This document shows positions 6,516 to 10,232 of a stretch of 63,912 nucleotides of DNA, in pieces. Position 1 is the first letter of the stretch, and each line of letters starts with the position of its first letter. The notes under the pieces were generated by a model that saw only the letters and a list, made by a program, of their open reading frames with translations, was not told the origin of the DNA and did not search any database. Source of the DNA: Octopus bimaculoides (taxonomy: Eukaryota); NCBI RefSeq assembly GCF_001194135.2, contig NC_068989.1, positions 74,126,622 to 74,190,533 on the forward strand, given 5' to 3'. The position numbers and the translations under genes were made by a program.

Positions 6516-6587
<72 letters not shown>

Positions 6588-6589
<2 letters not shown>

Positions 6590-6727
6590 TGCAGGAGTGG
6601 CTGTGTGGTGAGTAACTTGCTTACCAACCACATAGTTCCGGTTCAGTCCCACTGCGTGGCACCTTGGGAAAGTGCTTTCTACAAAAGCCCTGTGAATGGA
6701 TATGGTAGACGGAAACTGAAAGAAGCC

Positions 6728-6765
<38 letters not shown>

Positions 6766-6990
6766 GTATGTGTCTGTGTTTGTGTGTCTGTGTTTGTACC
6801 CCCACCATCGCTTGACAACCGATGCTGGTGTGTTTACGTCCCCGTAACATAGCGGTTCGGCAAAAGAGGCGAATACGTACTAGGCTTACAAAGAATAAGT
6901 CATGCGATCGATTTGTTCGACTAAGGGCGGTGCTCCAGAATGGTTGTAGTCAAATGACTGAAACAAATGGAAGAATAAAAGAATAAAAGA
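6588..6990 (+). mobile_element. Full-length tRNA-derived SINE (family A: tRNA-like head, internal microsatellite, 3' module, short tandem tail)
   Basis: Head ggtgcaggagtggctgtgtggt...ggttcagtccc with A/B boxes; internal (TA)/(TG) tract; 3' module ...gtcaaatgactgaaaca and aagaataa tail. Both modules recur many times in the window. Confidence 0.92.
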
Positions 6991-7756: not shown

Positions 7757-8019
7757 TTTATGTGTTTGCATATACGTATGTGTGTATGTGCGTGTATGTG
7801 TTTGTGTCAGAGAGAGGATATTCCTTTTACGCTCTCAGGATATGAAAACTCATAAACATTTGTTTCAGTTTGATTAACTCTAATCATCGATATTTATTAA
7901 TGGGCGATTGGTCAAAACCGACATCATACTTTACATCATGGCAGGATGAAATTATCGATGTTTGGTTGATTATTTTCTTAATTTCCTAAAGTTATCAATA
8001 ATTAATGCTAAAAGGCCAT

Positions 8020-8160
8020 CGTGTGGTTGGCAGGCTCTTAGGAGCGTCGGAATGCCTAAGTAACTGGCAGTAATTATTTTCAACCTTTTGCATTTTGATG
8101 TCATATCCCGCTGAGATCAACTTTGACTGTTGTCTTTTGGCTATCGATAAACTAGGGTAT
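8020..8160 (+). mobile_element. Degenerate SINE (family B)
   Basis: Weak by-eye alignment to the family B copy at 35974 (ttggcaggctcttag...gagatcaactttgac...tcgataaac). Confidence 0.45.
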
Positions 8161-8425
8161 CACTAAACGACTTTTGTCAATTTAATCAACTATTCTAGGT
8201 CACATGTTGTGTAACCTTTTATAATACATGATAAATGTTAGAAATTATAATACAAAAAACAGAATCAAAATATATCGCTGAAGACACTAGTCTTCAGCAT
8301 TTCTGAAACTTCAGCCAAACTTCTATTTTGTTATAAATATCACTACCTTGTTTCGGTAATGTCTAACTTTTTATTCCTCATACTCGCTATCGATAATGGC
8401 CCGAAACTGCTATGATCTTAGGCTG

Positions 8426-8460
8426 ATAACTGATGAGGGATGATCATGTCCACGTCTTAT
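8426..8460 (+). ncRNA. Degenerate minimal type I hammerhead ribozyme-like motif (GAA missing)
   Basis: ataa-CTGATGA-gggatgatcatgtcc-ACGTC-ttat: stem I ataa/ttat, intact CUGAUGA, GUC triplet, but no GAA of the GAAA element. Confidence 0.3.
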
Positions 8461-8554
8461 GTGTGATTTTTCTGTGGATGCTTTGTCGTCCTTCTGTGCA
8501 ATTTTTCACTCTTCCCCTCTCTCTCTCTTCTCTGTGTACATGTGTGTGTGTGCA

Positions 8555-8598
<44 letters not shown>

Positions 8599-8862
8599 TA
8601 TATAAATTTAAAGGAGGGTGACCAGTTGTTTGCTGCTAGACAGGTGTAAGATGGGCCTTGATACACTTCGGCTGGATCAATTGCGCGTGGGGTCTGATCT
8701 TGGAATACCCGAAACTCGCTTAGACTCTGGAAACATTACTGAGATGTATCTTCAAACTAATTTTATACATACATAAATGCATGTTGATGCAAACAAGAAA
8801 AATGGAACTCAAAATATGAGTGTATGTATATTTTCATTAATATATAGAAGTAACAGTGACCG

Positions 8863-8924
8863 AAGATCTGAGAGTTTGGTGTGTTGGCGCTTGTCAGTGC
8901 CAACGCATGAAATTCTCGGACCTT
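8863..8924 (+). ncRNA. Candidate pre-miRNA-like hairpin
   Basis: Paired by hand: 28 stem positions with no bulges (21 Watson-Crick, 5 G:U, 2 mismatches) and a 6-nt loop UUGUCA. A short basal stem (8856-8860 with 8927-8930) extends it. Confidence 0.45.
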
Positions 8925-9022
8925 GAGTACACATACACGCACACAGATATATATATATATATATATACACAATACACATACATACATAGATACATATATG
9001 TTTGCGTGTGTGTGAGTGTATG

Positions 9023-9059
<37 letters not shown>

Positions 9060-9244
9060 CCGAGCAAGCAAGTTTTTCTAACAAAACTGTCCGATGAACG
9101 GGAACGTGAAACTCCGAGTATCAGCTTTTTGTTATATTTCAGAATAATTGAGACAAGAGTAAAATATTAGATATATAATAACTAATATTGAGGGGGTGTG
9201 ATATGTTCAGTCGTTAACCCAGTCCTTTTATTCTATAACTAATA

Positions 9245-9271
9245 TATATAGATAGATAGATGGATAGATAC

Positions 9272-9331
<60 letters not shown>

Positions 9332-9362
9332 GTAGGTAGGTAGGTAGGTAGGTAGATAGATA
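9245..9362. repeat. (ATAG)n/(GTAG)n tetranucleotide microsatellite
   Basis: Read directly. Confidence 0.95.
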
Positions 9363-10049
9363 TCATATGTAGGTAGAGAAAAATCCAAGCAGTATCTTCT
9401 TGCATCACCTCTACTTACTGCAGAATTACAAAATTACAAAACCATATATAATTTGTGTCGTTGTCATATTAATGTGAGATATACATTACTTGCAGAGTTA
9501 TTATATAACAAAATAGGAAGTTTGAAAATTACACCCCCNNNNNNNNNNNNTATATATATATATATATATATATATGATGATGAAGAGATCATATGTAACA
9601 AAGAAAAAGCTACTAATTTCTATTCATACGTATACTTTTGTTTACATTTACGTCTAGGAAAACCGAGGGAAAATAATTTGTAGACATTCATTGTTTTCTC
9701 AAATTCGAAATAATTTAGATTTCATTTCAGATTTAGGCTAATTATTTTCCAGAATAATGGTTATTTCCTAGCTGCGAAACCAGTTATCTAATATAGACTC
9801 ACCCACACATATTTCCCAACGCGTACAAATACGCCAACATACGCAGATGTGTGGAAAATTTGTCTGACACTTTGTGGATTAACTCCGCTGTTCTCTCTGT
9901 CTCTCTGTCGATCACTATCTCTCTCCATTCGTCTGTGTTTCCATATCTCTCTTTTATATATATATATATATATATATATTTTTTATTTTTTTCATATATA
10001 TGCATGTAGATATGTGTGTGTGTGTATGGATGTATGTATTTGTTGTTTA

Positions 10050-10232
10050 TGTCTGTGTTTATCCCCCACCATCGTTGGTGTATTTACGTCCCCATTACTT
10101 AACGGTTCAGTAAATAGAGACCGATAGAATAAGTACTGAGCTTACAAAGAATAAGAGCTGGAGTCGATTTATTCAACAAACAGTGATGCTTCAGCGTGGC
10201 CGCAATGAAATGACTGAAACAATTAAAAGAGA
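10050..10232 (+). mobile_element. SINE family A, 3' module
   Basis: cccccaccatcg...tttacgtcccc...gagaccgatagaataagtact...aatgactgaaacaattaaaaga; matches 6780-6990 and 17204-17392. Confidence 0.85.

What the first reader, a model, noticed from the sequence alone, without database searches (positions are those of the whole stretch)
8856..8930. Bulge-free pre-miRNA-like hairpin with + strand G:U bias
Seen: 5' arm AAGAUCUGAGAGUUUGGUGUGUUGGCGC and 3' arm GUGCCAACGCAUGAAAUUCUCGGACCUU pair at 26 of 28 positions with no indels, closed by a 6-nt loop containing UGU, with a short lower stem after an internal loop. Five of the seven non-Watson-Crick positions are G:U on the + strand and only one is A-C; neutral decay of a DNA palindrome should give G:T and A:C about equally. 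It is a GC-richer island among microsatellites, and I saw no second copy in the window. Established: animal pri-miRNAs have stems of about 33-35 bp, often with an apical UGU motif, and coleoids have many lineage-specific miRNA families. Neither arm matches a conserved miRNA I recognise. Inference: possible novel intronic miRNA. This is my best candidate for a functional unannotated element here.
Basis: partly seen in the sequence, partly recalled or inferred. Interest (0 to 1): 0.72.

Follow-up and report, generated by a model that had tools for sequence, protein, structure and literature searches.

The report
Stable single-copy hairpin, unproven microRNA
The 62-77 base hairpin is real and is more than chance would give in this window. 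Nothing I could reach shows that it is a microRNA, so the likeliest reading is an ordinary local inverted repeat in repeat-rich non-coding DNA.

Summary
Bases 8863-8891 and 8896-8924 form an ungapped 29-position stem of 22 Watson-Crick pairs, 5 G:U, one A.C and one G.G. It has a 4-nt loop (UGUC) and a short lower stem (8856-8860 with 8927-8932). The + strand folds at -45.6 kcal/mol (z -6.2) and the - strand at -34.8 (z -3.7). It is the best non-microsatellite hairpin in the window, is single-copy there, and has no Rfam match.

The microRNA reading could not be tested. No cephalopod genome or small-RNA data were reachable, so conservation, copy number and processing are unknown.
- One cleavage register (5p 8867-8888, 3p 8901-8922, 56-nt precursor, 12-nt inter-arm loop) lies inside MirGeneDB ranges.
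- The unpaired loop is only 4 nt, there is no CNNC downstream, and the basal UG is out of register.
- The register that fits UG and UGU exactly gives a 48-nt precursor, outside known ranges.
- The G:U bias is not significant (p 0.11) and is partly an ascertainment effect.
- Chance alone predicts about 90 such hairpins in a 2.7 Gb genome, against about 164 annotated octopus miRNA genes.

Best reading: a local inverted duplication (template-switch type) that has since diverged, with no demonstrated function. I put bona fide miRNA at about 10%.

The parts
8863..8891 (+). 5' arm of the main stem. It is G+U-rich (11 G and 10 T out of 29).
8892..8895 (+). Terminal loop UGUC, 4 nt, closed by U8891-A8896. 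It contains UGU at 8892-8894.
8896..8924 (+). 3' arm of the main stem. It pairs with 8863-8891 at 27 of 29 positions (22 Watson-Crick, 5 G:U) with no indel.
8856..8862 (+). Lower stem, 5' side. GUGAC 8856-8860 is paired; C8861 and G8862 lie in a 2x2 internal loop. It contains the only basal UG (8857-8858).
8925..8932 (+). Lower stem, 3' side. G8925 and A8926 are in the internal loop, 8927-8928 and 8930-8932 are paired, and A8929 is bulged. It runs straight into the CA/TA microsatellite.
8867..8888 (+). Hypothetical 5p product in the only register compatible with MirGeneDB ranges: UCUGAGAGUUUGGUGUGUUGGC (seed CUGAGAG). This is a prediction to test, not an observation.
   Evidence: Inference and the propensities in PMC11701709
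8901..8922 (+). Hypothetical 3p product in the same register: CAACGCAUGAAAUUCUCGGACC. It gives 2-nt 3' overhangs at both ends and a 12-nt inter-arm loop (8889-8900). This is a prediction to test.
   Evidence: Inference

Best explanation
This is a single-copy short inverted repeat in non-coding, microsatellite- and transposon-rich DNA.

It was most likely created in one step by a local inverted duplication, a replication template switch that copies a stretch as its reverse complement next to itself. The two arms now differ at 7 of 29 positions through point substitutions, with no indels.

If the + strand is transcribed, the RNA folds into a very stable 29-position stem with a 4-nt loop. Such a stem is a default substrate for dsRNA-binding enzymes (ADAR, possibly Dicer). 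No specific function is indicated.

Shown: the structure, its strand asymmetry, its uniqueness in the window and the absence of any family match. Inferred: the mutational origin and the lack of function.
For: 1. The arms are adjacent with a 4-6 nt spacer and no indels, as a one-step inverted copy would give. Template switching is documented to create perfect stems of this size in a single event; a 28-base event founded hsa-mir-4713. Most such loci later gain point mutations (PMC10710096).
2. There is no copy elsewhere in the window. By contrast, two SINE-like families each have 4-7 copies in the same 64 kb. I saw no flanking direct repeat of 2 nt or more at any plausible boundary (read by eye).
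3. There is no Rfam family at gathering score anywhere in the window. In the E-value search, the only hit covering the stem itself is mir-4798 on the - strand (19 bits, E 1.6). A few weaker hits overlap it only as extensions from the neighbouring microsatellite.
4. Base rates: chance alone predicts about 90 hairpins with at least 27 of 29 pairs in a 2.7 Gb genome. Octopus species have about 164 annotated miRNA genes (PMC9699675). Few real miRNAs are this bulge-free.
5. The departures from a perfect palindrome are statistically compatible with neutral decay. G:U versus A.C at 5:1 gives p = 0.11. Five of 7 differences preserving pairing gives p = 0.045 for a named strand and 0.09 for either strand.
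Against: The + strand is clearly the better folder, by 11 kcal/mol, because 5 of 6 transition-type differences are G:U. Selection for RNA structure would produce that.

Arm divergence of 24% with no indel means the repeat is not very young, yet the stem is still intact.

One cleavage register matches several MirGeneDB propensities: U at positions 1 and 9, a mismatch at position 12, a star arm starting with C, and a 56-nt precursor.

I have no outgroup sequence, so the template-switch origin is inferred rather than shown.
Confidence: 0.55

Rival explanations
1. It is a young, lineage-specific canonical microRNA gene (or proto-miRNA) on the + strand. Drosha would cut about 11 positions above the base, between 8866 and 8867 and between 8922 and 8923. 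Dicer would then release a UCUGAGAGUUUGGUGUGUUGGC / CAACGCAUGAAAUUCUCGGACC duplex. The 5p arm would be loaded because of its 5' U.
For: - The total stem from 8856/8932 to the loop is about 35 positions, the optimum for Microprocessor (PMC7174388).
- This register gives a 56-nt precursor, a 12-nt inter-arm loop, 2-nt overhangs, 21 of 22 duplex positions paired, U at positions 1 and 9, a mismatch at position 12 and a star arm starting with C. All lie within MirGeneDB 3.0 ranges.
- UGU is present in the loop.
- The + strand G:U bias and the z-score of -6.2 fit an RNA-level structure.
- Octopus gained many novel miRNA families, and the published set is stated to be an underestimate (PMC9699675).
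- Template-switch hairpins are a documented source of new miRNAs.
Against: - The unpaired terminal loop is 4 nt; pri-miRNAs strongly prefer at least 10 nt unstructured.
- No CNNC occurs in the 35 nt downstream.
- In this register, the basal UG sits at -10/-9 instead of -14/-13.
- The alternative register that fits UG at -14 and UGU at 22-24 gives a 48-nt precursor with a 4-nt inter-arm loop. That is below the MirGeneDB minima of 49 nt and 5 nt.
- In that alternative (UG/UGU) register, a G:U wobble falls at upper-stem position 4 and a mismatch at position 8, both reported to impair or shift human DROSHA cleavage. In the register proposed here, the wobbles fall at positions 3 and 8.
- There is no Rfam match.
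- None of the 12 candidate seed sites appears as a seed entry in the held part of the octopus seed table.
- There is no expression, conservation or host-gene evidence.
- Register choice was post hoc.
Confidence: 0.1
2. It is a chance or microsatellite-assisted hairpin. A G/T-rich stretch (GAGAG, TTTGG, TGTGTG) happens to lie next to a partly A/C-rich stretch in DNA full of GT/CA/TA repeats. On this reading there was never a perfect palindrome.
For: - The 5' arm is 72% G+T, and G:U-tolerant pairing favours such arms.
- The window holds thousands of microsatellite-derived hairpins with at least 24 of 29 pairs.
- The 3' flank is a CA/TA repeat.
- Genome-wide, about 90 hairpins at this level are expected by chance, and about 2,300 at the Watson-Crick-only level of 22 of 29.
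Against: - The expectation in one 64 kb window is only 0.002 in the RNA sense, or 0.055 for Watson-Crick pairs only.
- Simulations never exceeded 25 of 29.
- The outer half of the stem (AAGATCTGAGAGTTT with AAATTCTCGGACCTT) is complex sequence, not repeat.
Confidence: 0.12
3. It is a fragment or a complete copy of a very small inverted-repeat transposon (a tiny MITE), or an internal hairpin of a larger element.
For: The window is transposon-rich, with SINE-like families and LINE remnants. The hairpin lies at the edge of a 330-bp unique island between microsatellites.
Against: - There is no other copy of 8600-8930 in the window, even with word-7 blastn or with 3 mismatches.
- I saw no target-site duplication of 2 nt or more at boundaries 8863/8924, 8856/8932 or 8850/8936 (read by eye).
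- A six-frame translation of 8601-8930 has no relative among 5.8 billion proteins. This is a weak test, because the source genome appears not to be in that collection.
Confidence: 0.08
4. It is a functional dsRNA element other than a miRNA. One option is a cis-acting ADAR editing or recruitment hairpin in a neural pre-mRNA. Another is a short hairpin source of Dicer-dependent endo-siRNAs.
For: Coleoid A-to-I editing is concentrated in introns and 3'UTRs, where hairpins are enriched (PMC9699675). A near-perfect 29-position duplex with a small loop resembles an shRNA more than a typical pri-miRNA.
Against: There is no evidence of transcription, editing or a host gene. Known hairpin-RNA siRNA loci have far longer stems (from memory). 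This reading is indistinguishable from the neutral one with the present data.
Confidence: 0.05

Closest known systems
Template-switch-generated inverted repeats, the raw material of de novo miRNA hairpins (Monttinen, Frilander and Loytynoja 2023, PMC10710096)
   Same: The arms are adjacent reverse-complement copies of about 28 nt with a very short spacer and no indels. Later point substitutions introduce wobbles and mismatches. The setting is non-coding, possibly transcribed DNA.
   Different: That class is defined by comparing parent and child sequences on a phylogeny. No outgroup was available here, so the origin is inferred from anatomy alone.
Canonical bilaterian microRNA genes as curated in MirGeneDB (including the 90 novel cephalopod and octopus families of Zolotarov et al. 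2022, PMC9699675)
   Same: The stem is about 35 positions and the hairpin is imperfect with wobbles. One register gives 22-nt arms, 2-nt overhangs, a 12-nt inter-arm loop and a 5' U. UGU is present in the loop.
   Different: The unpaired loop is 4 nt, there is no CNNC and the basal UG is out of register. The stem is almost bulge-free. There are no reads, no second-species copy and no match to any Rfam miRNA model or to the listed octopus seeds.
Engineered shRNAs and Drosophila-type hairpin RNA (hpRNA) endo-siRNA loci (from memory, not checked here)
   Same: Both have a near-perfect duplex closed by a tiny loop, the geometry that Dicer accepts without Drosha.
   Different: hpRNA loci have stems of hundreds of base pairs. 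shRNAs are artificial and are driven by their own promoters. Nothing comparable is shown here.
Microsatellite pseudo-hairpins that mimic miRNA families (mir-297, mir-466, mir-3149, mir-1277)
   Same: They occur in the same neighbourhood (8536-8606 and 8924-9072) and fold strongly.
   Different: Those are simple-repeat artefacts that score 30-51 bits, below gathering. The hairpin under study is complex sequence and matches none of them.

Membership tests
Canonical animal miRNA gene (MirGeneDB / Fromm 2015 criteria) | Imperfect hairpin with at least 16 complementary nucleotides between the two arms | tested here: met
   27 of 29 stacked positions pair. In the 8867-8888 / 8901-8922 register, 21 of 22 duplex positions pair. 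The MirGeneDB mean is 19 +/- 1.6.
Canonical animal miRNA gene (MirGeneDB / Fromm 2015 criteria) | Reads of 20-26 nt from both arms with 2-nt 3' offsets | not testable with these tools
   No small-RNA data are accessible. The criteria are as quoted in PMC9074900.
Canonical animal miRNA gene (MirGeneDB / Fromm 2015 criteria) | 5' end homogeneity of the mature product (typically above 90%) | not testable with these tools
   No small-RNA data (for the criterion).
Canonical animal miRNA gene (MirGeneDB / Fromm 2015 criteria) | Inter-arm loop of at least 8 nt and precursor length in the known range (median loop 15-16, minimum 5; mean precursor 60 nt, shortest 49 nt) | tested here: inconclusive
   Register A gives a 12-nt inter-arm loop and a 56-nt precursor, inside the range. 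Register B, the one that fits UG and UGU, gives 4 nt and 48 nt, outside it. The truly unpaired loop is 4 nt, against a preference for at least 10 nt.
Canonical animal miRNA gene (MirGeneDB / Fromm 2015 criteria) | Stem of about 35 bp (13 from the basal junction plus 22 to the apical junction) | tested here: met
   There are about 35 positions from G8856-C8932 up to U8891-A8896, including a 2x2 internal loop, one bulge and two 1x1 mismatches (rule from PMC7174388).
Canonical animal miRNA gene (MirGeneDB / Fromm 2015 criteria) | Processing motifs: basal UG at -14/-13, apical UGU(G), CNNC 16-18 nt past the 3' cut, mismatched GHG/CmR | tested here: inconclusive
   UGU is present (8892-8894). UG occurs only at 8857-8858, which is -14 for a cut at 8871 but -10 for a cut at 8867. 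There is no CNNC anywhere in 8925-8960. CmR is partial in register A: mismatch C8861/A8926 and G at +5, but G rather than C at -5. Individually the motifs have only moderate effects.
Canonical animal miRNA gene (MirGeneDB / Fromm 2015 criteria) | Presence in a second species, as required for novel octopus families by Zolotarov et al. | not testable with these tools
   No cephalopod genome is in any searchable collection. Indirect routes gave nothing.
Any described miRNA or other RNA family (Rfam 15) | Covariance-model score at or above the gathering threshold | tested here: not met
   There are no gathering-level hits in the whole window. The only hit covering the stem itself is mir-4798 on the - strand, at 19.2 bits against a gathering score of 75, E 1.6.
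MITE / small inverted-repeat transposon | Terminal inverted repeats flanked by a target-site duplication | tested here: not met
   I saw no flanking direct repeat of 2 nt or more at boundaries 8863/8924, 8856/8932 or 8850/8936 (read by eye).
MITE / small inverted-repeat transposon | Multiple dispersed copies | tested here: inconclusive
   There are none in the 64 kb window. The genome-wide count is not testable.
Mirtron | Hairpin ends defined by splice sites (5' GU, 3' AG) that pair with each other, inside a spliced gene | tested here: not met
   GU is at 8856-8857 and AG at 8926-8927, but G8856 pairs with C8932. The would-be 3' site is GAG, and no flanking exon or ORF was found.
Template-switch mutation product | One arm appears as a reverse-complement copy of the neighbouring sequence between a parent and a child node of a phylogeny | not testable with these tools
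   No outgroup sequence. The anatomy (adjacent arms, short spacer, no indel) is compatible.

The most novel reading that the evidence does not exclude
The hairpin is a recently born, species- or genus-restricted octopus microRNA. It would be caught at the proto-miRNA stage: created by a template-switch inverted duplication inside a transcribed intron, with pairing kept on the transcribed strand through G:U-only drift, and processed despite a minimal 4-nt terminal loop.
Probability: 0.1. Interest if true: 0.4.

Novelty: new member of a known kind. Interest (0 to 1): 0.18.

Why it matters
If it proved to be a processed miRNA, it would add one young family to the unusually large coleoid miRNA repertoire. 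It would also be an invertebrate example of miRNA birth from a one-step inverted duplication, with an unusually small loop. That would be useful but incremental.

If it is a neutral inverted repeat, as seems more likely, it matters mainly as a caution. In a multi-gigabase, repeat-rich genome, a very stable, strand-asymmetric hairpin of about 35 bp containing UGU is expected many times over without being a gene. Structure alone cannot nominate miRNAs.

Tried and rejected
1. Rfam, over the whole window at gathering score and over 8000-10000 at E up to 10. Nothing real covers the hairpin. The strong-looking mir-297, mir-3149, mir-1277 and mir-466 hits are TA/CA/GT microsatellites.
2. Full-text search of about 8 million papers for six 20-mers from both arms: no hits.
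3. Supplements of the octopus miRNA paper, searched for arm sequences and for 12 candidate seed sites. None appears as a seed entry. The file is truncated and carries seeds only, so this is a weak negative.
4. Exact look-up of the two long ORFs overlapping the hairpin, hoping to recover contigs of the same or sister genomes: not on record.
5. A six-frame translation of 8601-8930, concatenated, searched against 5.8 billion proteins as a proxy for a nucleotide search: no hit.
6. A 4,927-aa concatenation of 60 complex ORFs of the window, to find a host gene or the organism: no hit. A first attempt exceeded the length limit. Concatenated queries seem to work poorly in that tool.
7. A single transposon ORF did find relatives, at 50-57% identity in unnamed ENA contigs such as ERZ25073825. 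So the source genome itself is evidently not in the collection, and the organism could not be confirmed.
8. A gapped 18-base pattern in metagenome contigs and genome contigs. This was a poor choice.
9. Mirtron reading: rejected because the end geometry and splice signals do not fit.
10. tRNA-derived SINE head near the hairpin: ARAGORN finds nothing in the window.
11. A larger inverted repeat enclosing the island: only (TA)n self-complementarity.
12. Fromm et al. 2015 could not be opened. The criteria were taken from PMC9074900 and PMC11701709 instead.

Full report
**1. What is in the sequence**

RNAfold of 8840-8945 on the + strand gives one dominant hairpin at -45.6 kcal/mol. The 200 dinucleotide shuffles average -24.0 (z = -6.17), and none folds as well.

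The main stem runs from A8863-U8924 up to U8891-A8896. It has 29 stacked positions with no bulge or indel: 22 Watson-Crick pairs, five G:U pairs, one A.C and one G.G.
- G:U pairs: 8869/8918, 8874/8913, 8879/8908, 8882/8905, 8889/8898
- A.C: 8866/8921
- G.G: 8878/8909

The loop is UGUC (8892-8895).

Below a 2x2 internal loop (C8861 G8862 / G8925 A8926), GUGAC 8856-8860 pairs with 8927-8928 and 8930-8932, with one bulged A. Three more pairs (8850-8852 with 8934-8936) are possible.

The stem survives in context. The core pairs keep probability of at least 0.96 when 191 or 401 nt are folded.

On the - strand the five G:U pairs become A.C mismatches. The fold drops to -34.8 kcal/mol, z = -3.72.

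**2. Is it more than chance?**

Within this window, yes. I ran an ungapped scan of both strands for 29-position stems with loops of 3-12 nt. Setting microsatellite sequence aside, this hairpin is the top hit at 27 of 29 pairs. The next complex candidates reach 24 of 29. Forty first-order Markov simulations of a 63.9 kb sequence also top out at 23-25. From the window's base composition, the expectation is 0.002 such hairpins per window.

The same arithmetic gives about 90 per 2.7 Gb genome. Counting Watson-Crick pairs only (22 of 29), the figure is about 2,300. So the hairpin is not a chance event locally. Hairpins of this quality are still expected many times in a genome of this size, even before counting those made by mutational mechanisms.

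**3. The G:U argument**

That is correct under strand-symmetric mutation, but the numbers are small.
- Five G:U against one A.C gives a binomial p of 0.11 one-sided and 0.22 two-sided.
- Five of seven differences preserve pairing on a named strand. With an expected fraction of one third, that gives p = 0.045, or 0.09 if either strand had been acceptable.

Two further points weaken it.
- The hairpin was noticed because it pairs well when G:U is allowed on the strand being read. That selection enriches for G:U.
- Transcription-associated mutational asymmetry, an excess of A-to-G on the coding strand, could produce the same pattern with no selection for structure. This is known from mammals and recalled from memory; it has not been checked for cephalopods.

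The asymmetry is therefore a hint and nothing more.

**4. Surroundings**

The hairpin sits at the 3' edge of a unique island of about 330 bp (about 8600-8930). The stem region is about 50% GC, in a window of about 34% GC.

The island lies between (AT)19 at 8558-8595 on one side and a run of arrays on the other: an ATATATAC-type array, (TA)21 and (ATAG)30 from 8947 onward.

The window is a draft-quality, N-gapped sequence with 15 N runs totalling 5,021 N. It is AT-rich and microsatellite-dense, with dispersed SINE-like repeats and LINE remnants. I could not confirm the organism, because the closest relatives of a transposon ORF in the protein collection are unnamed ENA contigs at only 50-57% identity.

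I found no convincing exon, so 'intronic' remains an assumption.

Neither the hairpin nor the rest of the island has another copy in the window, although two SINE-like families have four to seven copies each. I saw no target-site duplication at any plausible boundary (read by eye). ARAGORN finds no tRNA-like sequence.

**5. Comparison with what defines a microRNA gene**

The criteria come from three papers.
- PMC9074900: reads from both arms with 2-nt offsets, and 5' homogeneity.
- PMC11701709, MirGeneDB 3.0: required inter-arm loop of at least 8 nt, observed minimum 5 and median 15-16. Mean precursor is 60 nt, with the shortest at 49 nt. Arms pair at 19 +/- 1.6 positions. U is favoured at positions 1 and 9. 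Bulges, wobbles or mismatches are favoured at positions 10-12. The motifs UG, GWG, CmR/mGHG, UGUG and CNNC are ancestral to bilaterians.
[quoted passage not shown] The optimal stem is about 35 bp, CNNC lies 16-18 nt downstream, and an unstructured apical loop of at least 10 nt is preferred.

The read-based and conservation criteria cannot be tested with these tools. The structural ones give a split result, depending on the assumed cleavage register.

*Register A* (5p 8867-8888 UCUGAGAGUUUGGUGUGUUGGC; 3p 8901-8922 CAACGCAUGAAAUUCUCGGACC)
- It fits 2-nt overhangs at both ends, a 12-nt inter-arm loop and a 56-nt precursor.
- It has U at positions 1 and 9, the G.G mismatch at position 12, and a star arm starting with C.
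- The lower stem is about 11 positions.
- The only basal UG (8857-8858) then sits at -10/-9 rather than -14/-13.
- The CmR motif is only partial.

*Register B* (5p from 8871)
- It puts UG exactly at -14/-13 and UGU exactly at positions 22-24, with 35-nt spacing. This is the textbook geometry.
- It leaves a 48-nt precursor with a 4-nt inter-arm loop, shorter than anything in MirGeneDB.
- It also puts a G:U wobble at upper-stem position 4 and the mismatch at position 8. Both are reported to impair or shift human DROSHA cleavage.

In both registers there is no CNNC anywhere in the 35 nt downstream, which is a CA/TA repeat. The truly unpaired loop is four nucleotides.

Because I chose the registers after seeing the sequence, the agreements carry little weight. 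The structure is compatible with a miRNA precursor, but it is not diagnostic of one.

**6. Searches for relatives**

Rfam 15 has no gathering-level match anywhere in the window. At E up to 10, the only hit covering the stem itself is mir-4798 on the opposite strand, at 19 bits against a gathering score of 75. A few weaker hits overlap it only as extensions from the neighbouring microsatellite. The high-scoring 'miRNA' hits nearby (mir-297, mir-3149, mir-1277, mir-466) are microsatellite artefacts.

The arm sequences occur in no full text of the paper library, and not in the supplements of the octopus miRNA study. None of the twelve candidate seed sites appears as a seed entry in its truncated table. 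By memory, neither arm resembles a conserved lophotrochozoan family.

Attempts to reach cephalopod DNA indirectly all failed or returned only chance matches:
- exact ORF look-ups
- six-frame translations searched as proteins
- a gapped pattern in the metagenome and prokaryote collections

**7. Most likely explanation**

The anatomy is two adjacent reverse-complement arms of about 29 nt, a 4-6 nt spacer, no indel, and differences that are nearly all transitions. A single replication template-switch event produces this, followed by point substitutions. That mechanism is documented to create stems of just this size and to seed some young miRNAs. Most such loci never become genes, because transcription and processing are separate requirements (PMC10710096).

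The arms differ at 7 of 29 positions, so the event is not very recent. With an indel-to-substitution ratio near 1:8-1:10 (recalled from memory, not checked), seeing no indel among 7 changes is unremarkable.

Octopus species have about 164 annotated miRNA genes. The authors stress that many lowly expressed hairpin products are background of the pathway (PMC9699675). Set against at least 90 chance hairpins, plus an unknown and probably larger number of mutationally generated ones, the prior for any one such hairpin is low.

My estimates are:
- neutral local inverted duplication: 0.55
- chance or microsatellite-assisted complementarity: 0.12
- bona fide young miRNA: 0.10
- transposon fragment: 0.08
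- other functional dsRNA element (ADAR or siRNA substrate): 0.05
- unassigned: the remainder

**8. Novelty and verdict**

The feature is real but of a familiar kind. Even in the best case it would be one more lineage-specific miRNA, with an interesting origin story. I score interest at 0.18.

The decisive tests are simple but need data I could not reach. They are a BLASTn of the hairpin against octopod genomes and mapping of the public octopus small-RNA libraries (GSE192550, PRJNA791920). The specific prediction is stacks starting at about 8867 and about 8901.

Noticed in passing
window 6565-6988, 9994-10231, 11420-11652, 14849-15067, 17204-17387, 39093-39211: A dispersed SINE-like repeat family with six or more copies at 70-85% identity, in both orientations. 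It is often adjacent to microsatellites, and its translations share a '...PHHRLTTDAGVFTSP...' string. ARAGORN finds no tRNA-like head.
   Followed up: partly
window 17470-17862, 25619-25699, 35934-36138, 55324-55429: A second dispersed repeat family at 76-89% identity, including a local tandem pair at 17524-17645 and 17741-17862.
   Followed up: no
window 49359-49571 (-) and 49830-50093 (-): Two open frames look like the C-terminal nuclease region of a retrotransposon ORF. The Pfam hits are weak: PD-(D/E)XK_9 at E 0.002, and VRR-NUC. The 88-aa frame has relatives at 50-57% identity in unnamed long ENA contigs such as ERZ25073825. They lie beside long AAT/ATT-type simple repeats at 50.1-50.7 kb.
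   Followed up: partly
window 52080-52358 (+): An open frame whose string (...LRKLQLYSLERRHERYAIICIWKI...) resembles, from memory, the C-terminal region of LINE reverse-transcriptase ORFs. It has no significant Pfam hit.
   Followed up: partly
window 43942-44482 (+): Two adjacent open frames, offset by a frameshift, with a transposon-gene-like look (...PELASDCDRTRVSARAAGLL...IGRSNVRRE...). The second frame (44219-44482), the only one scanned, has no Pfam hit. They are unexplained.
   Followed up: partly
window 8536-8606 and 8924-9072: Microsatellites (TA, CA/GT, ATATATAC) score 30-51 bits against the Rfam families mir-297, mir-3149, mir-1277 and mir-466, with E-values down to 1e-8, on both strands. 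All are below gathering. These are composition artefacts that could mislead an E-value-based miRNA screen.
   Followed up: yes
window 56890-56954 (-): The second-best hairpin in complex sequence: 24 of 29 pairs, 20 of them Watson-Crick. That equals the level reached by Markov-1 simulations, so it is probably chance.
   Followed up: partly
whole window (15 N runs, e.g. 15978-16892, 29438-30118, 47100-47791): There are 5,021 N in 15 gaps, nearly all abutting microsatellites. This marks a short-read draft assembly, so the true spacing and repeat lengths around features are uncertain.
   Followed up: no
protein-search tool behaviour: Concatenated multi-ORF queries returned no hits. An 88-aa ORF from the same 49.4-50.1 kb transposon region found 15 relatives when searched alone; that ORF itself had been dropped from the trimmed concatenation, which kept only its neighbour at 49359-49571. 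Negative results from concatenated queries may therefore not be informative.
   Followed up: partly
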